Origin: Heptranchias perlo
Taxonomy: Eukaryota
Assembly: GCF_035084215.1 (NCBI RefSeq)
Contig: NC_090340.1
Coordinates: 14,756,001 to 14,820,000 of the forward strand
Direction of reading: 5' to 3'
DNA length: 64,000 nucleotides
A model generated the notes under the pieces. That model was not told where the DNA came from and ran no database searches. It saw nothing but the letters and a program-made list of their open reading frames with translations. Shown here piece by piece: positions 4,968 to 57,820 of this stretch (positions are counted from its first letter, which is position 1; every line of letters begins with the position of its first letter). The position numbers and the translations under genes were made by a program.

Positions 4968-5069
4968 GGAGCAGAGGCTGATATCGTGCATTGTGCTGCA
5001 TTAGATTTCAGCAAAGACATGAACATTCCAAGACGTAAAGATGAAGAGGAGCGGACCGTGTACGCTCAG
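4968..5069 (+). pseudogene. Copy 1 cytoplasmic exon 2 (IVHCAAL = degenerate ITIM; TVYAQ = ITSM start)
   Basis: 102 nt with AG/GT boundaries, homologous to 33529-33629. Confidence 0.75.
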
Positions 5070-5277
5070 GTAAGGCTGAGTAACAGATCAGAGAAACATG
5101 GATCATTACTGTAACACAAACATTCATGCGATAGTGGAATATTTAAGGTTGTGCTGACTTTGACCTTGTATTGTATCAAAAGCTATTTGTGTATTATTCT
5201 GATGACTGCTTTGAGCAGCAGTCCACAAAACTTGCAATACGTCCAATCAACAATATTTCCAAACATTGGCTTTACAG

Positions 5278-5449
5278 AAATAAAGGGACAACTCGAGACA
5301 AGTTGGCGTAGGCAGCTCTAGCAGTGACTGGCTCAGTGAAAAGGGCGCAATGCAAAAATGACGAAAGAAGCACCGACTATGCCCAGCTACCATCGCAAAA
5401 CCAAAGAAGAATAACAAAGGTTGTTTACTCCGAAGCAAGAACCAAATAG
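5278..5449 (+). pseudogene. Copy 1 terminal cytoplasmic exon (LA*AAL, TDYAQL, VVYSEA)
   Basis: Homologous to 33836-34006. Starts 2 nt shorter than in copy 2 and has TAG at 5309-5311 replacing a motif Tyr. Confidence 0.75.
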
Positions 5450-7378
5450 CGATAGAATTTTAGATGTCGAAGTCTATGTTTGATGTCTACTGATCGCTTT
5501 CCGCTGCGGTATCAACTAAGCGCGTTTGTATACCGTGAAATACCGTACCTCCGAGAGGTAACGCATTCGAGTGCAATATCAGAGAATGCAGTCTCTCGTC
5601 TTTACTTACTGTTCAATTGCTTCCTGAATTTTAAATTAGCTGCTTTTAAGAGAAAACTAACTTTCCTGACATACTTTCATGTTAAATCTGTATTATCTAA
5701 CTAAACACAGATCTCTATTTCAATTACAATGACACGCTAATAGTCTTGGTGTACCTAATTATCATCATAGAAAAATTCAATAAAACCAGATTATACACGA
5801 TCTCTTATAAATCAACGATTCGTGCGGCTTTTTTGGGAGTAAAACTGCAAAACTTGTGCGTTAATTTATGTGTCATGTTACCGCGTTCTGACTTCCTGTC
5901 CAGGTGACGCTCCTGATATGGAAAGCAGGAATTTCCAGTGTATGGACTCGTCCATAAACCCACTGAACGTAGTTTCCAGTTGTTTTATGTCCTCCAAACA
6001 TCTGTTTACCCATGTGGCCACGTAGAATCATATAATCTTACAGAACAGAAGGAGTCCATGCGCCTGTTGTGGTCGTGCCTGCTCTTTGAAAGAGCTATCC
6101 AATTAGTCTCAAACCCTGCACTTCCCCAAAGCCCTGCAATGTTTTCCTTTTCAAGCATTTATCCAATTCCGTTTTGAAAGTTCCCATTGGACCTGCTTCC
6201 CCCACTGTTGCCCTTACTTCTAAGATTCATTATCCTATGGTGTTACTTTGTCATTTTTGTCAATATCCATGCAAACGACATTTGCTGTATTTCCTATATT
6301 TAATCTCTCTGCTGTTTCTCCAAAGCATCCTAAACTGAAAGTCAAGCATGATCTGCGTTTTCGAAATCCGTGCTGACTTGCCTTGATGAGCTCAGGTTTC
6401 TACAGGAACACAACAGTTTTATCCCGAATGACACAAGGCCTGGAAAATTCAAGGAAATATGCAACTGTTTACCTGCCATCATGTTTCAGTTTACTTCACA
6501 TTCGATGTTCTTATCTAATAACAATTCATTACTTCAAAATTGAGTCGAAGTGCTGCAGATTATTTTGATAATTAGTTAACCGAACAAGTGTCACATCTGT
6601 ATAAAGGAATCAAAAGGTCAATTTGTGGGCGTTCTATCAGTACTGATAAAGTTCTGATAAAGTTTAAGCGATTAGCTGGGGGGTGGGGGGGGGGCGGCGG
6701 GGTATTAGACGGAAATGACATGGTTCAGTCACTCAGCTCGAAGCACCAACACTGATACTTCTAAATTTAACTCTGTTAATTGCAATATACTGAAAATGTA
6801 TCTAGTGTCGAATAGCGGCAGTTATTGCTCATCGCATGTTTCAGTATAATTATAACAACACTTGATGTTCACATTCAATTAAGATTTTATTTAACATTCG
6901 ATTTTTCATTGCAGCTTCCATAAGAACATGAGAAATAGGAGCAGGAGTGGGCCACCCGGCCCCTCGAGACTTCTCCACCATTCAATTAAATCATGACACA
7001 TATTCCACCTCAACTCCAATTTCCCGCCCGATCCCCACACCTCTTGATTCCCTTAGAATCCAAACATCTATCGATCTCAATCTTGAATATACTAAACGAC
7101 TGAGTGTCCACCGTCCCATGGGGAAGGGAATTCCAAATATTTACCACCCTCTGAGTGAAGAAACTCCTCCTCAACTCAGTCCTAAATATCCAACACCTTA
7201 TCCTGATACTATGCACCCTAGTTCTGGACTCTCCAGCCAGGAGAAACATCTTTTCAGCCTCTACCCTGGCAATTCCTCTTAGAACCTTATATGCTTCAAT
7301 GAGATTCCCTCTTATTCTCCTAAACTCCTGAGTATACAGGCCCATTCTACTCAATCTTTCCACATAGGACAACCCTGT

Positions 7379-8420
7379 TGTTGACCGGAGGTCACCGGTT
7401 ACGGTTACTGGCTTAGTACAAAGAGGAGAAGTGTCAATTCTCTCTTAACTCTCAATTCGCTTTATTCACGCGGTTAGATCATATACATACAGCTTATACA
7501 TCTGGTTAGATATAGACATGCAGTTTGCACCAGGTTATAAAGTTTAATACCCAAACTAGGATCTAAACGCACACCCATTCGGTTTTCCTGACACACCCTG
7601 AGTGGTCACAGAATATAAAGGATAATACCCGAAAAGGAGAGCTGACGCTGGCCAGGCGTTCCGTTCTATCTCTCTCTCAATGTCGTCTCTACGTCCCTGA
7701 CGTAGGTTCTTCCACTTCCACGATGGTTGGTCTCCGGAGCCTTCGCTCTCTCGCTTTCGAGGTTTCTCTGACACTCCCTGAGTGGTCACAGAATATACGT
7801 CATCTCTACATCCCTGACGTAGGTTCTTTCGCTTCCTCGATGGTTGGTCTCTGGAGTCTTCGCTCTCTCTCTTTCGAGGTTTCTATGACACTCCCTAAGT
7901 GGTCACATAATATACGTTGTCTCTATGTCCCTGACGTAGGTTCTTGCACTTCCGTGATGGTTGGTCTCCGGAGTCTTCGCTCTCTCTCTTTTGAGGTTGC
8001 TCTGACACTCCCTGAGTGGACACAGAATATATGTCGTCTCTATGTCCCTGACGTAGGTACTTCCACTTCCGCGATGGTTGGTCTCCGGAGTCTTCGCTCT
8101 GGCTCCATGCCCCAGATTCTTCATTATTATTCCGAATCTTATCTCTTCAAGCTGTGCTGTCTCTCTCTTTTGTTGGTTTAGGCTTGCTCTCCTCATTGGC
8201 TCTGTCCCAAGGACTTAGGTAGCAATACCTCATTACCCCTTTTCTAAATAAGGACTTGTGTCTTATCACATCTCCTTTGTCTTTCACACAACTTAGTTAA
8301 TTCAAACCGGTTCCAGCCAACACAGGCCAGCGACTGAACTCAGGTTACTTCAGTTCCAAATTTGCTCTTGCCTGTATGTCAGCAGCTGATGTCTCAGGTT
8401 ACTGCAGCCCCTGGCCAACA
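7379..8420 (-). mobile_element. Probable solo LTR (about 1.04 kb)
   Basis: Termini TGTTGACCGG...CTGGCCAACA (TG..CA, 8/10 inverted) and a 4-bp TSD CTGT/CTGC. The CR1 sequence resumes on both sides. AATAAA on the minus strand at about 7461. Confidence 0.75.
7681..8100. repeat. Tandem array, about 3.6 x 117 bp, inside the LTR
   Basis: The TGACGTAGG core recurs at 7698, 7815, 7932 and 8049. Confidence 0.9.
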
Positions 8421-8925
8421 CTGCCATCCCAGGAATCAATCTAGTGAACCTTCGTTGTACTGCCTCTAAGCCAAGTATATCCCTCCTCAGGGAAGGAGGC
8501 CAAAGCTACAAACTGTATTCCAGGTGTGGTCTCGCCAAAGCCATGTACAATTGCAACATGACTTCCTTACTCTTGTATTCCAATCCCCTTACAATTAAGG
8601 CCAACATACCACTTGCCTTCCTAATTGTTGACTAACTGCATGTTAACCTTCTGTGTTTCGTATACAAGGACACCCAAATCCCACTGAACACCAACATTAA
8701 ATAGTTTCTCACCATTTAAAAATATTCAGTTTTTCTATTCTTTCTACCAAAGTGAATAACCTCACATTTCCCCACATCGTGCTCCTTCTGCCACCTGCTT
8801 GCCCACTCACTTAACCTGTCCATATCACATTGCCGACTCTTCACGTCCTCCTGACAGTTTACTTTACCACCTAGCTTTGCATCATCAGCAAACTTGGATA
8901 CATTACACTCGGTTCCTTCATCTAC

Positions 8926-17690: not shown

Positions 17691-17709
17691 CACACTAATT
17701 CACACTCAC

Positions 17710-27986: not shown

Positions 27987-30900
27987 GTACCTGTTATTCT
28001 CTATCCCATCTGTCTCAATAAATAAAACATCTGAAGGAGTTATCATATGAATTGAATTAGATTGATATCGTCCATCTATATTCTTCTTTCTCTAATTTAT
28101 TTCCATGTACAAATATTTTCTAAAGTGTCTGGTTCCACATAGAATATAAATAACCAAATGTTTAAAATATTTTATAACAGCTGCTGCACGTATTTCTCAA
28201 ACTCCCGAAAAGATGATTGCATTAAGGGGGACAGACATCACCTTCTACTGTGTAATCCCCCTCTCTCAGGACAACTCAGGGGTAGAAGTGCGTTGGTGGA
28301 AAGGGGGTGAGAACGAATATCTGCAAACAGGCGCCGATAACAGAAAACGATTTGGTGTCAAAAATAAAGGAGCCGGTTTCTTTGAGCTGCGGAACGTGAC
28401 TTTCCAGGACTCTGGAATCTATCACTGCGCAGTGATCCGTCAGGGAAGAGTTAGTGAAAATGGAACGGGCTCAAATCTAATTGTGTGCGGTAAGTGACTG
28501 GGATGATCGGGAACTTCCAAATTTATCAGATGTAACAAGAGGTCATTTTGCGATTGTTTCATTGTAAATTTTTGACGTATAAAAAAGTTATTTTAATACA
28601 TTTACATTCAAACTCAATGTTACTCCGATGTCTCTGTACACAGCTGCTAATTACACGGCATAATATGGCGCTTCATTTGCTGAGTGGTGTGAAATTCCAT
28701 CAATATTAACCAGAGTAAGTAACATATTACTGGATTCATCTCAAAATGTAGTTTCTACATCAGACTTCTGAGGAGGGAAGGTGCGGAACAAATTCCAAAT
28801 ATATTGATGACTGACTGAAAATACTATATATTAATGCACCTCTCCCGCCATTTATACGGCTCTTACCTTGTTTTAGGTGCTCTGTTTGTCCCCGTCACTG
28901 TCGGAGAGGTTTAACGGTCTCTGCTGAAATTAATGCTCAGAAAATGACAGGCTGGTTCGATTGGTGGATTTCAAATCAGATGCAATTAACTCAACAATCG
29001 ATGGATTCAATCAACAAACGGGACCACGAACCAAAATTTCGCCGCCTCTTTCGCCTCCAATAAATAAAATATTCCGCAGAGACTGAGCGGCTGAAACTTT
29101 CTGAGATTGAATGGAATGTAATTTCCTTCAGCCATTCCCATGCTCGGGCAGTGTGCACTGCCCGATAATCATTTGGTCCCTCCTTTTATTCTCGATAATG
29201 TACAGACTTTCCGTTTCTCTCTTGGGGAGACAGTCAGACAAGGCCAGAGTTACGAACAAACGGGGAATGACTGAGAATGGCATCAATCGCTCATATCTTA
29301 CGTTTAATATCTCCCCAGTAACCTGATTTTCCCCATTGTCTGTTCGACAGCTGCCCCAACTCCACTGAAGATTGTCTCCAGGACACCCGAGTGCAAATCG
29401 TCTGCCTCTCTGACTCTTGTGTGTGAAACGGCTGAGTTTTACCCCGAGGACTTCACCCTCACTTGGTATAAAAATGGCGTCAAAACCACAACTGGGATAA
29501 ATATCACTAAACGGCAGAACACCGAGGGTTTGTATGAAGTTTCCAGTTCTTTGGAAGAGACGCAGCTTAAGCGGAATGGATCTGTTTACATCTGTTTGGT
29601 AACTCATGTCACCCTCCAGGAACCCGCCATTGTAACTTACACTGTAAGCAATTCCAACCCAGGTAAGAGGCCAACAGGCCAAGAACTGAGGTCAGCTACT
29701 GTTAAATACTGAAAGGGTATTTCATAGAGTTTGTTCATATTGATAATCATAAGATAATTTGAATTAAATTCCCGGGAAATCGGACAGAAAATACATGTTT
29801 CAATGTAATATATTATTTACCCGAACCTGTTGTAAAAACGGAAGTAATATTGTCGCTCTCCACCCAGAAACTGCCAGTGAAACCTCGACAGCTTCCAAAT
29901 TGTTAAAAAAAAAGTATAAGCAGGGATTTTATCTTTTGTATCCGATTATTTTATGTCTCTTGCGTATTACTAAACATTTAAATTTGTCCGCTTGTTAAAG
30001 TGTTTTTATTCTATCCCATTATATTCTTTCCTTACATGAGCTGCGGGACCAGGAGCTGCAGTTCGGTGTCTACCACCGAGCCTCTTCTGGTGCGGCTCCT
30101 GATTCCGAGCTCGGTTGGGCGATATTGTGAATGGGTTAGAAATCGACCTTGTGGATAGGCCGTAACCTGACCCCTCCATGATACAGAAGTTTGGAGCGGG
30201 ATACCATTTCATTCCTTTCATTCAGGCCCTGCCCCAGATCTGTCTGTACTACAACCGGGTGCAAAGCATCGTTTTATTAACAACCATTTTTCTGTAATTA
30301 ACAAATACTCGTGTACTTGTTTCCTTTCCTATTCAGTGACAGTCTTATTTCGGTAAATACACTGCAGGTAATTGAATTGGCATTTAAACTAATTGAAGCA
30401 ACCAGCCTTTTTTCTCAGGCAATGGCGAGTCACATGTCACTGACTGGCCCTGATTTCAGCAAACAGCTTAAGACCAGAAGAAAAGTCAATTCGAAGAACA
30501 AGTCATTCGGTCCATCGTAACTTATTCCTCTAGAATTCTAACTCTCCCAAATCAATCTTCAGAACACCCTAAACTGATTCCCTCCGTCGCAGAATATTCC
30601 GGGCATGTGTCGCCATTTGTGACAAGGAGCTCCTTTTGATATCAGTTCTAAAAAGATAAATTAAGATTATTTTCAAATTCCCACGTTCTCGTGCTATAAT
30701 GCGGAGTTACTGTAAATATGAACGGTAGTTCAACCAACAAATTATCCCAACGTCTCTATTTAGATAACGCCCGCCACAAATTAGAACTCTTTGTTCCTTT
30801 TAATCTTGCAGATCGTGACTGTAAATATCGTTACCTCTGGGGTGCTGGATGGGCGGTGGGTGGATTGGCGTTTCTCGTGCTCATGATCATCATTGGGACA

Positions 30901-33839
30901 AGATGCAATTTGAAGAATAAAGGTAAGTGTAACCTTAATCGTCTTATTTTCAGAAAAATCTTCAGAGGGATAGTAACAGCATCCTGGGCGGCACAGCAGG
31001 AGAAAAGTGCGAGTGTTATTTAAAGTGCAGGTGATATTATCTGATACCAAAGGAATAGAGACTACCGCTTGCTGCAAATGGCACTAAATTCAGCATCTTA
31101 CAATGCAAGAATTCTCACAGAATCATATTATAAAGGATCTGATTATCTGGATATTAATAATGGATATTAATATCCACTTTGTGGCAGATAAGTGAAATCG
31201 GATCGATTGTTTCATCAATTTGCGGGTCCCTGACTATTTTGGGTAAAGTGGTGTCAGTGTCCAGTCGGTGTCGATGTGCACGACTGCTGATGGCTTCAGG
31301 GACTCGGATTTACAATACAATACAATACGGAAAATGTGATATCACAAAATAACTGCGACGAGGAAGACCATTCGGTCGATCTTAATTGGTCCGCCCAGAT
31401 GAAAATGTTCCCCCAATGTAGAATCCAGCTGTTTGTTAAAGGATCCTGGGACTTTTGCCTCCTTTGCCGTACCTGAAAGTTTATTCCACATGTTGATCGT
31501 TGAGAAGGAGAAATTCCTGACATCATTCTTAAAATTATCTTTTACTACTTTTGTCCCCCAGGACAGCACCCACAGTTAAATATTTAGTACTATATGGGTA
31601 CGGTAGTGTAGTGCTTATGGTACTGAACTTTTAATCCTGAGGCCTGGATTTATAATCCAGAGAAGGTGATTCAAACAGCGCCATGGCATTTTGAGAACTT
31701 GAAACCAGTTTTTAAAATTTGGAAATAAAAAGCTGGTTTCCGTGAAAAAGCAAGTGACCGTGAAGCTGCCGGATTGTCATAAAAAGCCAAGTAATTCATT
31801 AATGTCCTTTGGGGATGGAAACCTGCCGTCCTTACTCGGTCTGGCCTATATGAGACTCCAGTCCCACACCAATGTGGTTAACTCTTAACTGTTCTCTGAA
31901 GTGGTCTAGTAAGCTAATCAGTTGTCTCTAACTCAAGACAACTAAAGATGGAGAATAAATGCTGCCCTTGTTGGCCACACCACATCCTGAGAATGAATAA
32001 AGCAAAAATGTGGGTTAACTTTATGCGCTCAACATTCTTATATATTTCCATAAGATCACTGCTCAGACGCCTAATTTCCAGGCTAAAAGATTAAGTTTAT
32101 TCGGGGTTTCTTCATAACTCAGTTCACTGACACTGGGAAACCAGCCTGGTGGCTCTTCTCTGCACCGCCGCTAGCGCTAACGCTTGTTCATCAGTGACCA
32201 AAACTATTCTCAGTATTCAATGGACCATGTGACCAGAGCACTGATGCCAGCTTTTTCTTTCCAAATTTCAAATACTGGTTTCAAGATCTCAAAATGCCAT
32301 GGCGGTGTTTGAATCACCTTCTCTGGATCATAAATCCAGGCCTCTCGCTTAAAAGTTCAGTAACATAAGCACGACACTACCGTACCCTTATATTGCTATA
32401 TATTTAACTGTGGGGACTGAACTAGGGGACACTGGTAAAAAGTAGCAAATGATAATGTTAAGAATGATGTCAGGAATTTCTTCTTCACAACGATCAACAT
32501 GTGGAATAGATTCCCAATAACAGCAAAGGAGACAAATGTCCTAGGAACCTTTAACAAACAACTGGATTCTACTTCGGGGAGCATTTTCATCAGGGTGGAT
32601 GAATTAAATTCTACTGTTTTGCCTATGTAGTTCAACGTCGTATTGGCTTTGTCCACTGCTGCTCTGCTTGGATGGACATGTGTTTAGCGTCCAGTCTACT
32701 AAGACTCCTAAATCTCTTTTAGTTCCATCCTTAGCTATTTCAATGCAATCCATGGAATACATGGATAGTTTAATTTTCCTTCCCATCAGTCGTAATCTAC
32801 TCTTCTCTGCATTGAATTTCATCTGCCATTGCTCTTCCCACCAATATATCTAAATTCATGTTAAGCTTAACATTGTTTCTAAAAATACTTTTGAAAGCAT
32901 AAACATGGAAACTGAATAAACATTTTAATCATTGAATGTAATCAAATATCATTCATTCCCAGGTAAACAGGAAAGTGTAACAACACCGCACCGCAATGAA
33001 GAGCTGGTAGGTTCATAACATTCATCCAGGAAGAGGGTTCGAATTTAAATAAATATTATTATGATGGAGATATTTCATCAAAAGTATTTGTCCCTCTTTG
33101 ATGCGTCATTCAAATCGTGTTTTGAGAATTATTTGGCACTTGTTGCGATGCTGGTGTAACTGGTTAAACAAAGGATAAAAACAAGGTATGATGGTAGCTT
33201 TATTCAACATATACATAGGTAATAATTACTGGTAAATCCATCTAATCGTTGCTTTTGGAATCTGATATTACACGTCTAAGATTCTAAAATTATCTCTTGT
33301 TTAATCATATCTGTAACACTGCATGGTAGTGAAAATTGACAGGTTGGAATGTGAGTTACAGTGGACACACGATTTACCGGCCTTAATATTCGTACATTTT
33401 AAAATATATTCACTGTGGTTTTATTTGAAGTCCCGATCATTCTGTGCAATATTCCATCAGCAGTCTGTAAACTGGCGAAGGCAATGAACTAGCCACATAA
33501 CAAGACAATTTCCTTCTGGCCCATGCAGGCAGCAGAGAATGAGATAGCGCCTTATGCTGCATCAGATATGAGCAAAGCCAAGAGAACCCCAGGACGTAAA
33601 CGTGAAGAGCGAGGGCAGTACACGCTGAGGTAGGGCCGAGAAGCAGATAAGGGAAAATAGATCACCACCGTGGCACTAACATTCATGTAATAGCGGAGTA
33701 TTTTGGATTGTGCTGACTTTAACCGTGTATTGTATCTAAAGCTATTTGTGAGTTATTCTGATGACTACTTTGAGCAGCAGTCCACAAACTGGTAAAAAGA
33801 CCAATCAGCAATACTTCCAAACATTGGCTTTTCAGGTAA
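27932..33839 (+). CDS. V(J)-C1-TM IgSF receptor copy 2 (SIRP-like / NKp30-like / VJC1-type), about 311 aa with a truncated tail
   Basis: join(27932-27986,28181-28489,29351-29662,30812-30922,32963-33006,33529-33629,33836-33839). All junctions are GT/AG and phase-consistent through exon 5. Exon 6 is 101 nt, a frameshift that ends the protein at QYTLR*. Confidence 0.85.
28181..28489 (+). CDS. Copy 2 V-set exon with germline J-like G strand
   Basis: ISQTP, TFYC, VRWWK, LRNVTFQDSGIYHC, NGTGSNLIV; 309 nt, phase 1-1. Confidence 0.93.
29351..29662 (+). CDS. Copy 2 C1-set exon
   Basis: TLVCETAEFYPEDFTLTWYKNG..NTEGLYEVSSSL..YICLVTHVTL; 312 nt, phase 1-1. Confidence 0.93.
30812..30922 (+). CDS. Copy 2 stalk and transmembrane exon (no charged TM residue)
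   Basis: DRDCKYRY-LWGAGWAVGGLAFLVLMIIIG-TRCNLKNK; 111 nt. Confidence 0.88.
31596..32008 (+). mobile_element. tRNA-derived SINE with a family A LINE-type 3' tail
   Basis: tRNA-like head, body homologous to 44405-44890, and tail AATAAATGC..CACATCC..GAATAAA. Confidence 0.75.
32245..32600 (-). repeat. Inverted duplicate of about 31392-31740
   Basis: Reverse-complement match spanning the LINE/SINE junction. Confidence 0.8.
32963..33006 (+). CDS. Copy 2 cytoplasmic exon 1 (GKQESVTTPHRNEEL)
   Basis: 44 nt, phase 1-0, homologous to 4379-4422. Confidence 0.75.
33529..33629 (+). CDS. Copy 2 cytoplasmic exon 2 (APYAAS), with a 1-nt deletion
   Basis: 101 nt versus 102 nt in copy 1. Confidence 0.72.
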
Positions 33840-34006
33840 AACAAGGAAGAGCCCGTGACAAGCTGACGAACGCGACTCCAGAATTTTCTGGCTCCGGGAA
33901 AGCGAGGAAATCTAAAAATAACCGGCAAAGCACAGAATATGCCGAGCTTCAGGGGAAAAAACAAAGAGTAACAGAGGTCGTCTTCACAGAAGCAAGAACC
34001 ACATAG
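33836..34006 (+). CDS. Copy 2 terminal exon, open in the ancestral frame (TEYAEL); translated only through alternative splicing
   Basis: TTTTCAG acceptor; VKQGR..STEYAEL..VVFTEARTT* with no internal stop. Confidence 0.6.
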   Translation, partial: VKQGRARDKLTNATPEFSGSGKARKSKNNRQSTEYAELQGKKQRVTEVVFTEARTT

Positions 34007-47006: not shown

Positions 47007-47061
47007 ATGTCTGTGAGGGCTCTGCTTCAGAGCATACAGCTCATGGGAATTATTTTCATAG
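47007..47061 (+). CDS. Copy 3 leader exon MSVRALLQSIQLMGIIFI
   Basis: 55 nt, phase-1 donor, followed by an 85-nt intron. Confidence 0.82.
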
Positions 47062-47146: not shown

Positions 47147-47464
47147 TTGCTGCCGACACTCTGTTTAAAGTGACCCAGGCCCTTGAAAACACCAATTCCA
47201 TCGCTGATACAAATATTGCCTTCAATTGCACATTTCCCAGTGTTCCAGACGATTCAAGTGTAAATATATATTGGTGGAAACTCGCCGAAAAGGAATTGAT
47301 TCAATCAGGCTCAGACAGCAGGAAACAATTTAGTAATGAGAATGGAAGAGCCTCCTTCCATCTCCTGAATGTCAGTGTCCTGGACTCTGGAGTCTATTAC
47401 TGCTTCGTGACATTTCTAGGGGACAGGGCTGAAAATGGAAGTGGATCAAAGCTTGTCGTCAGTG
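47147..47464 (+). CDS. Copy 3 V-set exon with J-like end
   Basis: FKVTQ, AFNC, IYWWK, LLNVSVLDSGVYYC, NGSGSKLVVS; 318 nt, intact. Confidence 0.93.
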
Positions 47465-48065: not shown

Positions 48066-48352
48066 AAAGAACTTGCACTTATTTAGCGCCTTTGAAGACC
48101 TCCATAAAGCGCTTTACAACCAATGAAGTATTTTTGAAATGTAGTCACTGTTGTCATGTAGGAAAACGTGGCGGCCAATTTGCACACAGCAAACTTCTAC
48201 AAACAGCAATGAGATAATGACCAGGCAATTAATGATGGTACTTGAGGGATAAATATTGGCCAGGACAACAGAAGAACTTCTCTGCACGTCTTCGACTAGT
48301 GCTGTGTGATCCTTTATGTCCACCACAGAGAGTAGGGTTACATTTTAACATC
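48066..48352 (-). mobile_element. DeuSINE (SacSINE/AmnSINE-like), split by the family A LINE; a remnant resumes at about 52352
   Basis: Deu-domain-like sequence (TCCTGGCCAATATTTATCCCTCAA.., CTACATTTCAAAAATACTTCATTGG..AAAGCGCTT) on the minus strand. Recognised from memory of the family. Confidence 0.7.
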
Positions 48353-51300
48353 TTTTTTTTTATTCGTTCACGGGATGTGGGCGTCGCTGGCAAGGCCGGC
48401 ATTTATTGCCCATCCCTAATTGCCCTCGAGAAGGTGGTGGTGAGCCGCCTTCTTGAACCGCTGCAGTCCGTGTGGTGACGGTTCTCCCACAGTGCTGTTA
48501 GGAAGGGAGTTCCAGGATTTTGACCCAGCGACAATGAAGGAACGGCGATATATTTCCAAGTCGGGATGGTGTGTGACTTGGAGGGGAACGTGCAGGTGGT
48601 GTTGTTCCCATGCGCCTGCTGCCCTTGTCCTTCTAGGTGGTAGAGGTCGCGGGTTTGGGAGGTGCTGTCGAAGAAGCCTTGGCGAGTTGCTGCAGTGCAT
48701 CCTGTGGATGGTGCACACTGCAGCCAAAGTGCGCTGGTGGTGAAGGGAGTGAATGTTTAGGGTGGTGGATGGGGTGCCAATCAAACGGGCTGCTTTATCT
48801 TGGATGGTGTCGAGTTTCTTGAGTGTTGTTGGAGCTGCACTCATCCAGGCAAGTGGAGAGTATTCCATCACACTCCTGACTTGTGCCTTGTAGATGGTGG
48901 AAAGGCTTTGGGGAGTCAGGAGGTGAGTCACTCGCCACAGAATACCCAGCCTCTGACCTGCTCTCGTAGCCACAGTATTTATATGGCTGGTCCAGTTAAG
49001 TTTCTGGTCAATGGTGACCCCCAGGATGTTGATGGTGGGGGATTCGGCGATGGTAATGCTGTTGAATCTCAAGGGGAGGTGGTTAGACTCTCTCTTGTTG
49101 GAGATGGTCATTGCCTGGCACTTATCTGGCGCGAATGTTACTTGCCACTTATCAGCCCAAGCCTGGATGTTGTCCAGGTCTTGCTGCATGCAGGCTCGGA
49201 CTGCTTCATTATCTGAGGGGTTGCGAATGGAACTGAACACTGTGCAGTCATCAGCGAACATCCCCATTTCTGACCTTATGATGGAGGGAAGGTCATTGAT
49301 GAAGCAGCTGAAGATGGTTGGGCCTAGGACACTGCCCTGAGGAACTCCTGCAGCAATGCCCTGGGGCTGAGATGATTGGCCTCCAACAACCACTACCATC
49401 TTCCTTTGTGCTAGGTATGACTCCAGCCACTGGAGAGTTTTCCCCCTGATTCCCATTGACTTCAATTTTACTAGGGCTCCTTGGTGCCACACTCGGTCAA
49501 ATGCTGCCTTGATGTCAAGGGCAGTCACTCTCACCTCACCTCTGGAATTCAGCTCTTTTGTCCATGTTTGGACCAAGGCTGTAATGAGGTCTGGAGCCGA
49601 GTGGTCCTGGCGGAACCCAAACTGAGCATCGGTGAGTAGGTTATTGGTGAGTAAGTGCCGCTTGATAGCACTGTCGACGACACCTTCCATCACTTTGCTG
49701 ATGATTGAGAGTAGACTGATGGGGCGGTAATTGGCCGGATTGGATTTGTCCTGCTTTTTGTGGACAGGACATACCTGGGCAATTTTCCACATTGTCGGGT
49801 GGATGCCAGTGTTGTAGCTGTACTGGAACAGCTTGGCTAGAGGCGCAGCTAGTTCTGGAGCACAAGTCTTCAGCACTACAGCTGGGATGTTGTCAGGGCC
49901 CATAGCCTTTGCTGTATCCAGTGCACTCAGCCGTTTCTTGATATCACGGGGAGTGAATCGAATTGGCCGAAGACTGGCTTCCGTGATGGTGGGGATATCG
50001 GGAGGAGGCTGAGATGGATTATCCACTCGGCACTTCTGGCTGAAGATGGTTGCAAAGAGGATGAGACCGGGAAATTAATGGTGGGAAACATGGAGATGGC
50101 AAAAATGCTGAACAAATATTTTGTTTCAGTCTTTACAGTAGAGGACACTAAGAATATCCCAACACTGGACAAACAGGGGACTCTCGGGGGGGAGGAGCTA
50201 AATACGATTAAAATCACTCAGGAGATGGTACTCAGTAAAATAATGGGACTCAAGGCGGATAAATCCCCTGGACCTGATGGCTTCCATCCTAGGGTCTTGA
50301 GGGAAGTGGCAGTAGGGATTGTGGATGCTTTGGTGATCGTTTTCCAAAATTCCCTGGACTCAGGAGAGGTCCCGGCAGATTGGAAAACTGCTAATGTAAC
50401 ACCGTTATTTAAAAAGGGTAGTAGGCAGAAGGCTGGAAATTATAGGCCAGTTAGCTTAACATCTGTGGTGGGTAAAATTTTGGAGTCTATTATTAAGGAG
50501 ACAGTAACGGAACATTTAGATAAGCATAATTTAATAGGACAAATTCAGCATGGCTTTATGAAGGGGAAGTCATGTCTGACAAATTTGCTTGAGTTCTTCG
50601 AGGATATAACGTATAGGGTGGATAAAGGGGAACCAGTGGACATAGTGTATTTAGACTTCCAGAAGGCATTCGACAAGGTGCCACATAAAAGATTATTACT
50701 TAAGATAAAAAATCACGGGATTGGGGGTAATATTCTGGCATGGGTGGAGGATTGGTTATCGAACAGGAAGCAGAGAGTTGGGATAAATGGTTCATTTTCG
50801 GACTGGCAACCAGTAACCAGTGGTGTTCCACAGGGGTCGGTGCTGGGTCCCCAACTCTTTACAATCTATATTAACGATTTGGAGGAGGGGACCGAGTGCA
50901 ACATATCAAAATTTGCAGATGATACAAAGATGGGAGGGAAAGTAGAGAGTGAGGAGGACATAAAAAACCTGCAAGGGGATATAGACAGGCTGGGTGAGTG
51001 GGCGGAGATTTGGCAGATGCAATATAATATTGGAAAATGTGAGGTTATGCACTTTGGCAGGAAAAATCAGAGAGCAAGTTATTTTCTTAATGGCGAGAGA
51101 CTGGAAAGTACTGCAGTACAAAGGGATCTGGGGGTCCTAGTGCAAGAAAATCAAAAAGTTGGTATGCAGGTGCAGCAGGTGATCAAGAAAGCCAACGGAA
51201 TGTTGGCTTTTATTGCTAGGGGGATAGAATATAAAAACAAGGAGGTATTGCTGCAGTTATATAAGGTATTGGTGAGACCGCACCTGGAATACTGCATACA

Positions 51301-52351
51301 GTTTTGGTCTCCATACTTAAGAAAAGACATACTTGCTCTCGAGGCAGTACAAAGAAGGTTCACTCGGTTAATCCCGGGGATGAGGGGGCGGACATATGAG
51401 GAGAGGTTGAGTAGATTGGGACTCTACTCATTGGAGTTCAGAAGAATGAGAGGCGATCTTATTGAAACATATAAGATTGTGAAGGGTCTTGATCGGGTGG
51501 ATGCAGTAAGGATGTTCCCAAAGATGGGTGAAACTAGAACTAGGGGGCATAATCTTAGAATAAGGGGCTGCTCTTTCAAAACTGAGATGAGGAGAAACTT
51601 CTTCACTCAGAGGGTGGTAGGTCTGTGGAATTTGCTGCCCCAGGAAGCTGTGGAAGCTACATCATTAGATAAATTTAAAACAGAAATAGACAGTTTCCTA
51701 GAAGTAAAGGGAATTAGGGGTTATGGGGAGCGGGCAGGAAATTGGACATGAAGCTGAGTTCGGATCGGTCAATGCCCTGTGGGTGGCGGAGAGGGCCCAG
51801 GGGCTATGTGGCCGGGTCCTGCTCCGACTTCTTGTGTTCTTTAGATTTGTGGTTGGGATCAGATCAGCTATGATCTTATTGAATGGCGGAGCAGGCTCGA
51901 GGGGCCGATTGGCCTACTCCTGCTCCAATTTCTTATGTTCTTATGTTCTTAAACGCTTCAGCCTTGTCTTTTGCACTCACGTGCTGGACTCCGCCATCAT
52001 TGAGAATGGGGATGTTTGCAGAGCCTCCTCCTCCCGTTAGTTGTTTAGTTGTCCACCACCATTCACGACTGGATGTGGCAGGACTGCAGAGCTTTGATCT
52101 GATCCGTTGGTTGTGGAATCGCTTAGCTCTGTCTATAGCATGTTGCTTCCGCTGTTTAGCATGCATGTAGTCCTGAGTTGTAGCTTCACCAGGTTGGCAC
52201 CTCATTTTTAGGTACGCCTGGTGCTGCTCCTGGCATGCTCTTCTACACTCCTCATTGAACCAGGGTTGATCCCCTGGCTTGTTGGTAATGGTAGAGTGAG
52301 GAATATGCCGGGTCATGAGGTTACAGATTGTGCTGGAATACAATTCTGCTG
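48353..52351 (-). mobile_element. Young 5'-truncated family A LINE with an uninterrupted RT ORF, split by a CR1 insertion
   Basis: 536-aa RT ORF at 48416-50026 plus a fragment at 51951-52343 that rejoin in frame (KDKAEAF/ATIFSQKCRV); poly(A) tail. Confidence 0.93.
50057..51950 (+). mobile_element. Young 5'-truncated CR1 LINE with an intact 557-aa RT/C-terminal ORF
   Basis: ORF 50078-51751 has no stops; (TTCTTATG)n tail; AAA duplicated at both junctions. Confidence 0.95.
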
Positions 52352-53067
52352 ATCGGATGGCACTCTCCGCAGTTCTTATTTTCCAGTTATAAATGTCTCT
52401 CTCACGCCGAAGTAACCCGTGAAATGAAGGTTTCGCCTTTAATTAATAGCTCCGATTGTGATTTAATAAATTTCTTGTAAACCGTACGAGTAACACGAAT
52501 CAGAGAACTGAAGGCTGGAAATTGAATTGCTTTCGTGTTTGGGGATAATTGGGAGAAAGGATGTTTGTCGAAGGCGTTTCGCCGTCGCAGTTTATTTCTC
52601 GGGTTACACTCTGTAACAGGGCGGGTGGTGGGGGGCGCCCGGGCGGTTGTGGGCTTGCGATTCCTCTTTTCACTGTCGGTAGTGATACTGTGTGAGCACA
52701 TTCTAAACGTTTTGTTGGGTCGGGAATACTGGGCATAGAAAGTCTTCACAAACGCATTTACTATTCGCTACAGAGACCAGAGGAATGCTTCCCCATGCTT
52801 TCCAATTCTTGCAAATAGCGGAAATAGAAGGAAGTCAGGTTTCGAGATTTGATACAGGAAACAATGTAAATCATGAACACAATCTGTATTGATTAAACTG
52901 TAATTTGTTCGCTTCAACATAAACAAACAGATATTTAGCTCTCTGATACTGTTATAGCCGGTCTGAATTCATATTTGTCCATTTGGAAGGCTCCGTCACA
53001 AAAGGGAATAAAGTTCTAAATTGCAGAATATAGCAAGTATTAACTTTCTTCTTTGCTCCTTCACCAG

Positions 53068-53378
53068 CTCCCCCAACTCCCCTGAGGATTGTCTCCAAAG
53101 CATCTGAAAGTAATGTATCTGTTTCTTTCACTCTCGTGTGTGAAATGGCTGCATTTTACCCGGAGGGACTGACTACCACTTGGTATAAAAATGATAGAAG
53201 CATTGAGATTGGAATACGTACAACTAAACAGCTCACTAGAGCCGGGATGTATGAAGCTTCCAGCTATCTTGAAGAGACACAGCCTGTTCAGGGAGGGACT
53301 GTCTATGTCTGTCTGGTTTCTCACGTGACCCTCCCGATTCCACCATGGCGATTTACTTGGTTCCCAATTCTAATGCAG
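53068..53378 (+). CDS. Copy 3 C1-set exon, with a 1-nt deletion near 53340
   Basis: TLVCEMAAFYPEGLTTTWYKN..YVCLVSHVTL. The ancestral G strand MAIYLVPNSNA is in the shifted frame. Confidence 0.9.
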
Positions 53379-53599
53379 GTAAGATGTCACTTTTCTTACA
53401 AAAACAAACATCTGTCAGTAATCTGTGAGTGCTTTATTGCTCGATAATGGAAATTTGCCGTATACATCATTGAAAGGGAAACATGTTGGAAATGTCGTTC
53501 CAAATAGCGTACAGTGGAATTTATCCCCAGCGTTACTTTTTTTGTAAAATTACATCAGTATTAAGAATATTGAAATTGAATGGTTAAAACCTTTACAAT

Positions 53600-54724: not shown

Positions 54725-54844
54725 GCATTGACAGTACTTCGCCCTCGCCTTATTTACGGATCCTTGGATTGGCGGGGTTTGCATTGGCGTTTCTGGTGCT
54801 GGTGATCACCATTGGAATGTTGTTCAGATTAAGTATCTGTAAAG
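54725..54844 (+). CDS. Copy 3 transmembrane exon (ILGLAGFALAFLVLVITIGMLF)
   Basis: 120 nt, phase 1-1, homologous to 30812-30922, intact in the ancestral frame. Confidence 0.85.
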
Positions 54845-55493
54845 GTAAGATATCGCCCGATGGTTTAATTTAAACAGAAAATACAACGGACAGAGAGGGC
54901 TAGTCAGCAGGGAGAGAGGATTTATCTTCGCTATAACTTAAAGGTCAGAAGTTTTGTCGGCGCGGGAATAGAGCTCTGGTGCTTGTTGAATATTGAAATC
55001 GGTTTGTGGTCCTGAAATTGATCTTAGAATGGTATTAATTTAAAGATGGATTGTATTCCCGCTGCGCTGCCTCCCACCTCATCCAGATCCGGAAATTGGT
55101 TCTTTGTTATCCATAGGGTTAAATATACCAGGGGATGAACACATCTTAAATTCCTCTCTCCACAACTTTAGGCAGGGGTGTCAGCCCGTTTATGTTTTAA
55201 AAGAGAAAGCAATTTTGCATTAGTATTGGTTCACTGCGTAAATCCACGATGCGGAATTTTAATGATTTTTTTGGACTTTTCCCTCACTCTAAGTTGACCT
55301 TCGCTGTACTTGCTGAATCACATCGGGCATCATTCACAATGAAGTTTTAAATTTTGTGTTTTACTCGGCAGAGAGAAAAGATGAAGCAAACATTTGTGAA
55401 GAACCCATAAGTTTATAACATTAATCCGTTGAATTTTTTAAGTGTAACGTGAACATTTTGTGTTGAACTGAGAACTTTTCAAATATATTTCAG

Positions 55494-56694: not shown

Positions 56695-56810
56695 TTGGCA
56701 ATATTTCCGAAATTACAACTGCAACTACACTTCAAAAGTACTTATTGTCTGTGAAGCGCTGTGGGCCGTCCTGGTGTCCTCAAAGGGGCTAAATAAATGT
56801 AAGTTCTTCC
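56695..56810 (+). mobile_element. DeuSINE 3' fragment
   Basis: ACTACACTTCAAAAGTACTT..GTGAAGCGCT..ATAAATGTAAG. Confidence 0.6.
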
Positions 56811-56869
56811 TTCTATGTTCAGCGTTCGGAAATAAATTTAAGTTCCCAGGGCCTCACTAATATTTATAT

Positions 56870-57310
56870 CACTCGAATGATAGCTGGGATGGGATGTTTT
56901 AGTTTTGAGGAGCGACTGGAGAAACTTTTTTCCCGCTAAAACTGAAGAATAACAGAAGAAGATCTGATAGAAGTGTTCAAATTATGAATGATCTCACGAA
57001 AGTAAATAAGGAATATCTATTTCCTGTGACCCATGAGTCGGCAACTCGAGGACATAAATTTAAGATCATCACCAAAAGGACACAGGTACGAGAATTGTTA
57101 TTTTGCCAGAGAGTTGGGACATGAAATCCCTACCAGAACCGCTGGTGGAATCAGAATCCATAAAAACATTTAAAAGAGGAGCGGATAAATGTTTCAAAAA
57201 GACAAAAAAACAAAAGCATATGGCGAAAGGGCATGGGACTAAGACTAAGTGGATACCTCTTTCGGACAGGCGGCACAGGCAAGAGTATGTAAAATTCTGT
57301 GATTCTAACA
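56870..57310 (+). mobile_element. Decayed CR1 3' end
   Basis: EERLEKL, TRGHKFK and FKRGADK remnants. Confidence 0.65.
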
Positions 57311-57640
57311 CGATAACACACACATGAATTGTGAAACAGTGGATGTAATGAACAATAAATACTGTATATTGTAGACACTGTCTTCTGGATAATTGAACTA
57401 TATTAACAATCATTATGGATTTGGGATGATCTATAGCTTTACTTCCAAAGTACTTATTATAGGAGAATGGATGTTTTGTAAATAAAACGGCTGTTGCCAG
57501 AGGTAACTGGCCAACTCAATAATATAAATATAATAATCTAAAGACTATTCAAATATCATGGAGACGGTACTCTATTTCATCAAGCATTACGTAGATTGAT
57601 GAAATTAACGAGATAACGTTACAATGCATTGCTTTTACAG

Positions 57641-57820
57641 AGCTTGCAAACAGCAGTTGATAACCCGATGACTTACGCTGCCGTCGTTCTGCCTGGTTCT
57701 CAGAAAAATGGAAAACCGAAAAGGAAGGAAAGGAGCACAGAGTGCTTAGAGATGAAGACGATACACTAGAGGAGAGAAGCACCGATCGTCCATACAGAAC
57801 CAAGATTCGAATTATACTAA
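57641..57820 (+). pseudogene. Copy 3 terminal cytoplasmic exon (MTYAAV, STECLEM, stop at 57767, IVHTEP)
   Basis: TTTTACAG acceptor. Motif spacing matches 33836-34006 and 5278-5449. Confidence 0.7.

What the first reader, a model, noticed from the sequence alone, without database searches (positions are those of the whole stretch)
4968..57820. Five ancestral Tyr motifs, knocked out in a different pattern in each copy
Seen, as copy 1 / copy 2 / copy 3. Motif 1: VHCAAL / APYAAS / exon not found. Motif 2: TVYAQ|(V) / VHAE|V with frameshift / not found. Motif 3: LA*AAL / LTNATP / MTYAAV. Motif 4: TDYAQL / TEYAEL / TECLEM. Motif 5: VVYSEA / VVFTEA / IVHTEP. Single-base changes hit the Tyr codon repeatedly (Y>C, H, N, F, stop). 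Known: SIRP-alpha has alternating ITYADL, TEYASI, LTYADL and SEYASV motifs. Inference: the ancestor was a SIRP-alpha-like SHP-1/2-recruiting receptor, and the duplicates may have been selected to lose inhibitory signalling (decoy or paired-receptor dynamics) rather than decaying at random.
Basis: partly seen in the sequence, partly recalled or inferred. Interest (0 to 1): 0.8.

Follow-up and report, generated by a model that had tools for sequence, protein, structure and literature searches.

The report
Decayed tails of shark SIRP-like receptors
Three old, damaged members of a large shark and ray immune-receptor gene family sit in this window, and their missing signalling tyrosines look like ordinary loss of constraint rather than a targeted switch-off.

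Summary
The letters are right: all 13 motif strings are at the stated places. The five-tyrosine ancestor is also right. Annotated relatives from sharks, rays and a chimaera keep all five motifs; in 50 distinct tails the Tyr is kept in 169 of 187 motif positions.

The three copies are not recent duplicates. Each has its nearest relative in another species. All three are damaged in this assembly:
- Copy 1: 126-nt deletion in V, no C1 or TM exon, last exon out of frame, TAG at motif 3.
- Copy 2: complete, but a 1-nt deletion in the motif 1/2 exon stops the frame.
- Copy 3: 1-nt deletion in the C1 exon and TAG between motifs 4 and 5.

Some losses are inherited. Motif 3 of copy 2 is also lost in an intact Heterodontus protein, and copy 3's clade lacks the motif 1/2 exon.

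Tyr positions changed no more often than other tail positions: 6 of 12 against 82 of 235.

Across the family, ITIM-tailed and short-tailed forms do alternate repeatedly. I had no RNA data and no relatives' DNA. Other first readers noted this family elsewhere in the genome; those notes are unchecked.

The parts
690..744 (+). Copy 1 leader exon (MSASMVFLSLTLRGIICT, phase-1 donor)
   Evidence: matches the leader of P0161/P0164
915..1109 (+). Copy 1 V(J) exon with an in-frame 126-nt deletion that removes strands C to E (ITFYC...SQ/QDSGVYHC)
   Evidence: alignment to copies 2 and 3; only the 3' part matches Pfam V-set; 85% identical over 60 columns to P0164
2333..4004 (+). LINE-like repeat fragment in the place where copy 1 should have its C1 and TM exons
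   Evidence: 89% identical to 48352-50051 and 88% to 60833-61736; no C1 or TM match in copy 1
4379..4422 (+). Copy 1 cyt0 exon (44 nt, KQERVMGPTRHEEL)
   Evidence: 13 of 14 identical to P0164
4968..5069 (+). Copy 1 cytA exon: motif 1 IVHCAAL (Tyr to Cys, TGT) and motif 2 TVYAQ (kept)
   Evidence: 27 of 34 identical to P0164
5278..5449 (+). Copy 1 last exon: 172 nt, K-stop in phase 0. In the old frame: LA*AAL (TAG), TDYAQL, VVYSEA
   Evidence: 40 of 55 identical to P0161
27932..27986 (+). Copy 2 leader exon
28181..28489 (+). Copy 2 V(J) exon, intact (FYC, WW, YHC, GTGSNLIV)
   Evidence: Pfam V-set 8.5e-10; 75-76% identical to Heterodontus P0015
29351..29662 (+). Copy 2 C1 exon, intact, 312 nt
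   Evidence: Pfam C1-set 1.2e-13; 75% identical to H. perlo P0005
30812..30922 (+). Copy 2 TM exon, uncharged core GGLAFLVLMIIIG
   Evidence: 75% identical to P0173
32963..33006 (+). Copy 2 cyt0 exon (44 nt)
33529..33629 (+). Copy 2 cytA exon, 101 nt: IAPYAAS (Tyr kept, flanks off consensus). A 1-nt deletion follows; the old frame reads AVHAE (Tyr to His), the actual frame reads GQYTL and then R-stop
33836..34006 (+). Copy 2 last exon, open in the old frame: LTNATP, TEYAEL, VVFTEA. In frame only if cytA is skipped
   Evidence: pairs with Heterodontus P0173 (KVTEATP) in the tail tree, SH-aLRT 91
47007..47061 (+). Copy 3 leader exon (MSVRALLQSIQLMGIIFI)
   Evidence: resembles the N-terminal residues of P0079 and P0178 printed (compared by eye)
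47147..47464 (+). Copy 3 V(J) exon, intact
   Evidence: 60% identical to the second V of S. torazame P0169
48352..51748 (+). LINE-like element in the V-C1 intron of copy 3, with a 583-codon open frame (50000-51748)
   Evidence: Pfam RVT_1 3.7e-31
53068..53378 (+). Copy 3 C1 exon, 311 nt: a 1-nt deletion after ...TLPIP shifts the frame (expected MAIYLVPNSNAG is in the next frame), so the TM exon is out of frame
   Evidence: Pfam C1-set 4e-11
54725..54844 (+). Copy 3 TM exon, with Arg just before the hydrophobic core (YLRILGLAGFALAFLVLVITIGMLF)
   Evidence: nearest relatives P0080 and P0169 have Lys/Arg at that place and short tails
57641..57817 (+). Copy 3 relic of the last exon: MTYAAV, TECLEM, TAG at 57767-57769, IVHTEP
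   Evidence: end branch 0.93 against a median of 0.25 in the tail tree
5119..5277 (+). Conserved 3' part of the intron before the last exon (counterpart in copy 2: about 33680-33835)
   Evidence: 82-87% identical between copies 1 and 2, against 62-80% in the windows spanning the neighbouring exons (whole-exon values 70-72%) and 63-66% in the long introns

Best explanation
The window holds three old paralogues of a large multigene family found in all cartilaginous-fish groups sampled. The family's members are non-rearranging receptors built from a leader, a V domain with a germline J-like end, one C1 domain, a TM segment and a tail encoded by three small exons: cyt0 (44 nt), cytA (102 nt, motifs 1 and 2) and a last exon (motifs 3 to 5). 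In intact members the tail carries five conserved tyrosines: two ITIM-like, two TxYxx(L/I/V), and one near the C-terminus. These presumably dock SH2 phosphatases, as in SIRP-alpha; that step is inferred.

In this window none of the three genes can make such a tail.
- Copy 1 is a gene wreck.
- Copy 2 is complete, but a 1-nt deletion in cytA ends the frame at the first codons of the last exon.
- Copy 3 belongs to a clade without cytA whose closest members are short-tailed. Its last exon is an orphan relic, and a 1-nt deletion breaks its C1 exon.

The missing tyrosines are best read as loss of constraint. Part of it is old and inherited: motif 3 in copy 2's lineage, and the absence of cytA and perhaps His at motif 5 in copy 3's lineage. 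The rest is decay of exons that are no longer translated. Nothing shows that the Tyr codons were hit more than their neighbours.
For: - Gene plan and lesions. Exon lengths are 312 against 311 nt for C1, 102 against 101 nt for cytA, and 172 nt for copy 1's last exon; phases are given.
- Domains: Pfam V-set and C1-set.
- Family: 271 library proteins at E <= 1e-10 to the copy 2 C1 exon. All 77 named hits of the 79 in the profile search are chondrichthyan, from 14 species; the other two are unnamed Logan records.
- Intact five-motif tails: P0161, P0011, P0013.
- Tyr kept in relatives: m1 40 of 42, m2 31 of 39, m3 42 of 44, m4 40 of 42, m5 16 of 20. Tyr columns have a mean top-residue frequency of 0.88 against 0.45 for the 90 other columns.
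- Window copies keep 6 of 13 Tyr; against relatives, Fisher p = 2e-4.
- Tyr against other tail positions, each copy compared with its nearest relative: 2 of 5 vs 21 of 98; 2 of 4 vs 36 of 91; 2 of 3 vs 25 of 46. The expected total is 4.3 and the observed 6, P = 0.22.
- Nearest relatives are in other species: copy 1 with H. perlo P0164/P0161, copy 2 with Heterodontus P0015/P0173 and H. perlo P0005, copy 3 with S. torazame P0169 and Mobula P0080.
- Shared old losses: P0173 has KVTEATPELSGS against copy 2's KLTNATPEFSGS. P0178 has no cytA and reads PVHNDP at motif 5.
- Relic decay: end branches of the last exon are 0.32 for copy 1 (sisters 0 to 0.05) and 0.93 for copy 3 (median 0.25). The C1 branches of copies 2 and 3 are ordinary: 0.09 and 0.19, median 0.12.
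Against: - Copy 2 is otherwise flawless, with all splice sites and every ectodomain landmark intact.
- Copy 2's last exon is still open over 56 codons, with the stop at the old place, and its end branch (0.25) is shorter than that of its intact sister P0173 (0.51). Skipping the symmetric cytA exon would restore the frame and keep TEYAEL. It may therefore be a working gene.
- The two 1-nt deletions rest on the assembly alone. No read covered them.
- Twelve or thirteen sites give little power: a twofold excess at Tyr could not have been detected.
- dN/dS between copies 1 and 2 is above 1 in cyt0 (4.8) and in the 5' part of cytA (2.0), though on only 9 and 17.5 synonymous sites.
- The relatives are gene models, some surely wrong, and 11 of the tails come from proteins whose species I did not look up.
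Confidence: 0.62

Rival explanations
1. One reading: the copies were selected to lose inhibitory signalling. They would act as decoys or as the non-inhibitory partners of ITIM-tailed siblings with similar ectodomains, perhaps driven by pathogens that exploit the inhibitory forms.
For: - The family has both kinds: 36 ITIM-tailed and 20 short-tailed proteins among 76 classified, with at least 13 switches on the C1 tree.
- Short-tailed relatives carry Arg or Lys in the TM, often with a C-terminal VDH (P0010, P0192, P0210, P0183).
- Copy 3's nearest relatives are short-tailed with Lys or Arg where copy 3 has Arg.
- Loss of motif 3 is kept in an intact Heterodontus protein.
- H. perlo P0164, the closest relative of copy 1, is an annotated full receptor whose tail stops after motif 2. 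Its last residues (HKGQPVTS) match copy 1's last exon read in its third frame.
- Single motif losses (Tyr to His, Phe, Cys) occur in 18 of 187 positions of annotated relatives.
Against: - There is no excess of change at Tyr over neighbouring residues.
- Copy 1 lacks the C1 and TM exons and most of V, so it cannot be a decoy receptor.
- Copy 3 is frameshifted before the TM.
- The Tyr changes of copy 1 (motif 3) and copy 3 (motifs 4 and 5) lie in exons that are not translated, where selection on signalling cannot act.
- The switch count rests on a poorly resolved tree (22 of 71 forks open) and on gene models.
Confidence: 0.2
2. Copy 2, and perhaps copy 3, is a working gene. The 1-nt deletions would be assembly errors, or, for copy 2, bypassed by regulated skipping of the cytA cassette, giving a receptor with a single TEYAEL motif.
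For: - cytA is a symmetric 0-0 exon, and cyt0 to last exon is in frame.
- Clades without cytA exist: P0014, P0170, P0178, P0126.
- The intron before the last exon is 83.5% identical between copies 1 and 2, more than the exons beside it. Conserved flanking introns are typical of regulated cassette exons; that is general knowledge, not tested here.
- Copy 2's ectodomain branches are short.
Against: - Neither deletion lies in a long homopolymer: the contexts are GAGGGCAG and CCACCATGG.
- No RNA evidence either way: the three runs listed held next to none of the words and covered only repeats.
- No isoform pair differing by cytA was seen among the H. perlo isoforms I looked at.
Confidence: 0.15

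Closest known systems
SIRP family of mammals (SIRP-alpha inhibitory, SIRP-beta with DAP12, SIRP-gamma short-tailed)
   Same: - N-terminal V-set domain with a germline J-like end, followed by C1-set domain(s), a TM and a tail with alternating ITIM-like and TxY motifs.
- The family contains inhibitory, charged-TM and short-tailed forms.
- SIRP-alpha (2wng) and SIRP-gamma (4i2x) are among the best non-antibody matches in the PDB.
- The SIRP plan and the SHP-1/2 and DAP12 coupling are taken from passages of PMC12975943.
   Different: - One C1 domain here against two in SIRPs.
- An IgA1 heavy chain and UrIg2 score as well or better than SIRP-alpha.
- No tail-to-tail comparison could be made, because no tetrapod SIRP-alpha tail was obtained.
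- The ligand is unknown.
UrIg / UrIg2, non-rearranging VJ-C1 genes of sharks (PMC12227049, passages read; PDB 9dmx)
   Same: Non-rearranging VJ exon followed by C1 domains, in cartilaginous fish. UrIg2 is the best or second-best PDB match.
   Different: UrIg2 has nine C1-type domains, and the paper's text holds no occurrence of 'ITIM' or 'SIRP'. The family here has one C1 domain and an ITIM-type tail.
Paired Ig-like receptor clusters such as KIR, LILR/PIR and teleost NITR (recalled, not tested here)
   Same: Tandem multigene clusters with many pseudogenes. Inhibitory members have ITIMs. Activating members arise from them through a charged TM residue and a truncated tail, leaving ITIM relics downstream.
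   Different: Those families use C2/I-set or V domains, not a V(J)-C1 antigen-receptor-like ectodomain.

Membership tests
Chondrichthyan V(J)-C1 receptors with a five-tyrosine tail (unnamed; NCBI labels such as 'PTPNS1-like', 'tapasin-related protein-like') | V-set exon ending in a J-like GxGxxLxV motif | tested here: met
   Pfam V-set for copies 2 and 3, partial for copy 1. The exons end GTGSYLIV, GTGSNLIV and GSGSKLVV.
Chondrichthyan V(J)-C1 receptors with a five-tyrosine tail (unnamed; NCBI labels such as 'PTPNS1-like', 'tapasin-related protein-like') | One C1-set exon and a TM exon, all in phase 1 | tested here: met
   Met for copies 2 and 3. Not met for copy 1, which has neither exon.
Chondrichthyan V(J)-C1 receptors with a five-tyrosine tail (unnamed; NCBI labels such as 'PTPNS1-like', 'tapasin-related protein-like') | Tail exons homologous to those of intact members | tested here: met
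   Five pieces match the tail profile at E from 7.6e-17 to 6.8e-6. They are placed next to P0161/P0011 and P0173 in the tail tree.
Chondrichthyan V(J)-C1 receptors with a five-tyrosine tail (unnamed; NCBI labels such as 'PTPNS1-like', 'tapasin-related protein-like') | Five tyrosines in consensus context, translated | tested here: not met
   6 of 13 Tyr are kept, and no copy can translate a canonical ITIM or TxYxx(V/I/L) motif in the assembled frame.
SIRP family proper | One V-set plus two C1-set domains | tested here: not met
   One C1 exon each in copies 2 and 3. A single relative of unknown species, P0004, has two. The SIRP plan is taken from PMC12975943.
SIRP family proper | Closer in sequence to SIRPs than to other V-C1 proteins | tested here: inconclusive
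   Profile against the PDB: IgA1 heavy chain 8.5e-34, UrIg2 4.3e-32, SIRP-alpha 1.3e-29, SIRP-gamma 9.6e-26.
SIRP family proper | Tail homologous to the SIRP-alpha tail; recruits SHP-1/2; binds CD47 | not testable with these tools
   The tail-only searches returned only chondrichthyan proteins or nothing usable. Binding needs experiments.
Paired activating/inhibitory receptor family | Related ectodomains with ITIM tails in some members and short tails plus a charged TM residue in others | tested here: met
   Met at family level: 36 ITIM-tailed and 20 short-tailed, at least 13 switches, and R...VDH transmembrane segments. For copy 3 the Arg lies at the edge of the TM, so it is inconclusive there.
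Pseudogene | Frame-breaking lesions in otherwise recognisable exons | tested here: met
   Copy 1: several. Copy 2: one, in the tail only. Copy 3: one in C1 plus an in-frame TAG in the relic. All rest on the assembly alone.
Pseudogene | No expression; neutral rate of change | tested here: inconclusive
   No RNA run held the stretch. dN/dS between window copies is 0.36-0.37 for the ectodomain and 0.37-0.71 for the last exon, and above 1 on very few sites for cyt0 and cytA. These are long-term averages of two lineages.

The most novel reading that the evidence does not exclude
Copy 2 is alive. The family would tune inhibitory strength by editing the tail exon by exon. The symmetric cytA cassette (motifs 1 and 2) would be included or skipped under control of the unusually conserved intron before the last exon. 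Lineages would then fix different subsets of the five tyrosines; for example, motif 3 has been lost in both the window's species and Heterodontus. On this reading the Tyr pattern is a graded, selected signalling code in the oldest jawed vertebrates, and the family is the cartilaginous-fish counterpart of SIRP-alpha/beta.
Probability: 0.12. Interest if true: 0.65.

Novelty: new member of a known kind. Interest (0 to 1): 0.33.

Why it matters
As a case of 'tyrosines knocked out by selection', the finding does not hold up: these are damaged or orphaned tail exons in a gene cluster that is turning over.

The background it exposes is more useful. Cartilaginous fishes carry a large family of receptors shaped like antigen receptors (V(J)-C1), with a conserved five-tyrosine inhibitory-type tail and short-tailed, charged-TM siblings. 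Public annotation labels the members inconsistently: tapasin-related, SIRP-beta-like, PTPNS1-like, CD276, NCR3LG1-like, Ig lambda-like, MHC class II-like.

I found no paper on this family in five full-text searches. A proper description would bear on two questions: the origin of SIRP-type paired receptors, and non-rearranging relatives of antigen receptors.

Tried and rejected
- **RNA evidence.** The look-up of sequencing runs listed only three runs of one sample, with next to none of the words. Laid on 28101-34100, they covered only repeat pieces at about 31.7-31.9 kb and 32.7-32.9 kb and no exon. Nothing can be said on expression or on the 1-nt deletions.
- **Tail-only protein searches.** P0011 residues 140-254 and P0050 residues 268-406 returned only two proteins each. 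The atlas search of the P0161 tail gave one unnamed lead at 0.82 and meaningless structure rows. No link to a tetrapod SIRP-alpha tail could be tested.
- **Rfam on 4900-5500.** One chance-level hit. The two-sequence consensus fold of the conserved intron showed one compensatory pair of 28, so an RNA gene was rejected for lack of evidence.
- **Missing copy 3 exons.** A search between 54846 and 57640 for a cyt0 or cytA exon, or for the short terminal exon of relatives, gave nothing convincing. The best was a 14-residue match at E = 0.007 near 55164-55205, in a frame that does not fit the phase of the TM exon.
- **Invalid dN/dS rows.** In one search the rows 'V c1-c2', 'V c1-c3' and 'TM c2-c3' were computed in a wrong frame through my own coordinate slip. 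They are invalid and I dropped them.
- **Rows dropped from counts.** In one search two near-duplicate tails (P0160, P0159) were dropped before counting. For motif 2, three rows without a cytA exon (P0170, P0178, P0194) were dropped afterwards, because the profile had aligned unrelated residues there (31 of 42 became 31 of 39).
- **Background for copy 2.** The 3' piece of cytA beyond the deletion was used only for the Tyr position, not for the background count.
- **Supplementary files.** I did not ask for any.

Papers as seen: PMC12975943, PMC12227049 and PMC10751288 as found passages only; all others as search listings only.

No spliced model was ever joined. Every search and every alignment of window genes was done exon by exon, and counts were summed afterwards.

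Full report
**What is there.**
The window has no N and 42.5% G+C. All 13 peptide strings of the finding are on the + strand at the places given.

Self-comparison shows that only short blocks are shared between the three loci, and the rest is interspersed repeats. The shared blocks are:
- 531-852 and 1024-1717 with 27787-29111;
- 4308-5449 with 32890-34006;
- 29348-29668 with 53065-53384.

Translated searches with copy 2's exons gave these results:
- a V exon in all three loci (884-1114, 28150-28494, 47137-47469);
- a C1 exon in copies 2 and 3 only;
- a TM exon in copies 2 and 3 only;

Pfam calls the exons V-set and C1-set.

**Gene plan.**
Reading the exon borders gives a phase-1 immunoglobulin-type gene:
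- leader (55 nt);
- V exon ending in a J-like GxGxxLxV;
- C1 exon (312 nt);
- TM exon;
- cyt0, a 44-nt exon that moves the phase from 1 to 0;
- cytA, a 102-nt symmetric exon with motifs 1 and 2;
- a last exon with motifs 3 to 5.

Without it the TM exon and cytA do not join in frame.

**State of the three copies .**

*Copy 1*
- It has a leader and a V exon with an in-frame 126-nt deletion that removes strands C to E.
- It has no C1 and no TM exon. A LINE-like fragment (2333-4004) lies in their place.
- cyt0 and cytA are intact, with Tyr to Cys at motif 1.
- The last exon is 172 nt. Spliced in phase 0 it reads K-stop. In the old frame it has TAG at motif 3.

*Copy 2*
- Every exon and every splice site is present.
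- cytA is 101 nt. After IAPYAAS the frame shifts, so the product would end ...RGQYTLR-stop.
- In the old frame motif 2 is His, motif 3 Asn, motif 4 intact and motif 5 Phe.

*Copy 3*
- The leader and V exon are intact, and a LINE with an open RVT_1 frame sits in the intron.
- The C1 exon is 311 nt, with a 1-nt deletion before the G strand. This puts the TM exon out of frame.
- No cyt0 or cytA was found.
- The last-exon relic reads MTYAAV, TECLEM, TAG, IVHTEP.

So none of the three can translate a canonical motif as assembled.

**The family.**
I searched exon by exon and never joined a spliced model. The copy 2 C1 exon found 944 proteins at E <= 0.001 and 271 at E <= 1e-10 in the representative library. 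A profile of 20 full-length relatives found 79 proteins at E <= 1e-10. The 77 that carry a name are all from cartilaginous fishes: Callorhinchus, Heptranchias, Heterodontus, Mustelus, two Scyliorhinus, Stegostoma, two Chiloscyllium, Pristis, two Mobula, Hemitrygon, Hypanus and Narcine. The other two are unnamed Logan records. The names given by the annotation pipeline are inconsistent.

No protein is more than 85% identical to any window exon. So either the window's species is not among the annotated ones, or these loci were not annotated.

**The five-tyrosine ancestor.**
H. perlo P0161, P0011 and P0013 carry IVHYAAL, TVYAQ, LTYATL, T(D/E)YA(E/Q)L and A(V/A)YSEA. The table gives the Tyr count at each motif in 50 distinct tails.

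| Motif | Tyr kept | Replacements |
|---|---|---|
| 1 | 40 of 42 | His, Asp |
| 2 | 31 of 39 (after dropping three rows without cytA) | His x3, Phe x4, Arg |
| 3 | 42 of 44 | Glu, Cys |
| 4 | 40 of 42 | His x2 |
| 5 | 16 of 20 | Cys x2, His x2 |

The total is 169 of 187. The three best conserved columns of the whole tail are the tyrosines of motifs 1, 3 and 4.

**Not recent duplicates.**
The next table gives each copy's nearest relatives.

| Copy | Region | Nearest relative |
|---|---|---|
| 1 | V | H. perlo P0164, 85% over 60 columns |
| 1 | Last exon | Groups with P0161/P0011, SH-aLRT 91 |
| 2 | V | Heterodontus P0015, 75% |
| 2 | C1 | Pairs with H. perlo P0005, SH-aLRT 91 |
| 2 | Last exon | Pairs with Heterodontus P0173, SH-aLRT 91 |
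| 3 | V and C1 | S. torazame P0169 (second unit) and Mobula P0080, SH-aLRT 91 |

Between the copies themselves, V is 43 of 101 identical and C1 is 50 of 90 identical for copies 2 and 3. These are old paralogues that happen to lie side by side.

**Which losses are inherited.**
- P0173, an annotated full receptor, reads KVTEATPELSGS where copy 2 reads KLTNATPEFSGS and others read KLTYATLALTGS. The loss of motif 3, with Pro at +3, predates the split of the two species' lineages.
- Copy 3's wider clade (P0178) has no cytA and has His at motif 5 (PVHNDP against IVHTEP). Its closest relatives, P0080 and P0169, have short tails without any motif, and Lys or Arg where copy 3 has Arg before the TM core.
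- P0164, the closest relative of copy 1, ends ...TVYAQKHKGQPVTS. These last residues match copy 1's last exon read in its third frame (IKGQLETSW). In that lineage too, motifs 3-5 are not read in the five-tyrosine frame. Whether this is the same event cannot be told without the DNA.

The private Tyr changes are therefore:
- copy 1: motifs 1 and 3;
- copy 2: motifs 2 and 5;
- copy 3: motif 4 and the TAG.

**Rate test.**
The window copies keep 6 of 13 tyrosines against 169 of 187 in relatives (Fisher p = 2e-4). So the constraint on Tyr is gone here.

Against each copy's nearest relative, Tyr changed as in the table.

| Copy | Tyr positions changed | Other tail positions changed |
|---|---|---|
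| 1 | 2 of 5 | 21 of 98 |
| 2 | 2 of 4 | 36 of 91 |
| 3 | 2 of 3 | 25 of 46 |

The expected total is 4.3 and the observed 6 (Poisson-binomial P = 0.22; pooled Fisher p = 0.36). Counting copy 2's motif 3 as well gives 7 against 4.7 (P = 0.14). Tyr codons were not hit more than their neighbours. With so few sites, a modest excess could not have been seen.

That all changes are single-base changes says little. By the genetic code, eight of the nine single-base changes of a Tyr codon alter the residue or make a stop.

**Other rate evidence.**
- End branches of the last exon are long for copy 1 (0.32, sisters 0 to 0.05) and copy 3 (0.93, median 0.25), but not for copy 2 (0.25, sister 0.51).
- The C1 branches of copies 2 and 3 (0.09 and 0.19, median 0.12) and the V branches (0.16, 0.18, 0.33; median 0.17) are ordinary.
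- This fits long disuse of the tail relics of copies 1 and 3, and a recent lesion, or none that matters, in copy 2.
- dN/dS between window copies is 0.36 (V, copies 2-3), 0.37 (C1, copies 2-3) and 0.37 to 0.71 for the last exon. It is 4.8 and 2.0 for cyt0 and the 5' part of cytA of copies 1-2, on 9 and 17.5 synonymous sites only. Three other rows of that call were in a wrong frame and are void.

**Family-level paired-receptor pattern.**
Of 76 classified relatives:
- 36 have the ITIM-type tail;
- 20 have a short tail;
- 4 have another long tail;
- 16 are partial or have no TM.

Several short-tailed ones share a TM with Arg in its first third and VDH at its end. On the C1 tree the two tail states change at least 13 times. 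That tree has 22 of 71 forks open, and gene models can be wrong. This supports the general idea of paired-receptor turnover in the family, which unchecked first-reader notes also report elsewhere in this genome. It does not show that the Tyr changes in this window were selected.

**Relation to known families.**
Against the PDB, P0161 alone gives UrIg2 3.6e-15, an antibody heavy chain 2.7e-14 and SIRP-alpha 3.4e-14. The family profile gives IgA1 heavy chain 8.5e-34, UrIg2 4.3e-32, SIRP-alpha 1.3e-29 and SIRP-gamma 9.6e-26.

The family therefore works like a SIRP-type paired receptor family and resembles it in plan. Differences and gaps remain:
- it has one C1 domain instead of two;
- it is not measurably closer to SIRPs than to antibodies or UrIg2;
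- the tail could not be compared with a tetrapod SIRP-alpha tail.

The UrIg paper's passages describe a different gene (VJ plus nine C1 domains), and its text has no ITIM or SIRP term. Five full-text searches found no description of this family. Subscription journals are largely outside that library.

**Limits.**
- There are no reads over the lesions and no RNA.
- There is no DNA of relatives.
- The relatives are predicted proteins.
- The trees are short (52 to 103 columns) and were built with the quick method.

**Verdict.**
The interpretation as selected knock-out is not supported. The simplest reading is three old family members whose tail exons are inherited variants, orphaned relics or freshly frameshifted.

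Noticed in passing
window 5119-5277 and 33680-33835: The 3' two thirds of the intron between cytA and the last exon is 82-87% identical between copies 1 and 2. That is more than the exons on either side (70-72%) and far more than the long introns (63-66%). There is no Rfam match and only a weak common fold. It could be a splicing control element for the cassette exon, or a gene-conversion patch.
   Followed up: partly
window 48352-51748, 2333-4004, 60833-61736: Three copies of one LINE-like element, 88-96% identical. One has a 583-codon open frame with a reverse-transcriptase domain (RVT_1, 3.7e-31), so the element may have been active recently. One copy sits where copy 1 lost its C1 and TM exons.
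   Followed up: partly
window 915-1109; protein P0165 (H. perlo): Copy 1's V exon lacks strands C to E through an in-frame deletion. An annotated H. perlo isoform (P0165) has a similar compact V (…SQDHSW/LLSATFQDSG…) on an otherwise complete five-tyrosine receptor. A first-reader note reports another compact V 16.5 kb beyond the window. Such a stub keeps only strands A, B, F and G.
   Followed up: partly
proteins P0010, P0192, P0210, P0183, P0005 (relatives, not in the window): Short-tailed relatives share a distinctive TM segment with Arg or Lys in its first third and Val-Asp-His at its cytoplasmic end. That is a basic and an acidic residue in one TM, which suggests assembly with a signalling adaptor.
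   Followed up: no
protein P0164 (H. perlo XP record, closest relative of copy 1): An annotated full receptor whose tail stops nine residues after motif 2. Those residues match the last exon read in a shifted frame, so a naturally truncated two-tyrosine tail may exist in another species.
   Followed up: partly
window 7682-8100: Self-comparison shows a tandem repeat with a unit of about 117 bases, about 90% identical between units.
   Followed up: no
protein P0169 (Scyliorhinus torazame): This annotated protein runs from one V domain straight into a second V-C1-TM unit. It is probably a gene model that fuses two neighbouring family members, which is a warning about counts based on predicted proteins.
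   Followed up: no
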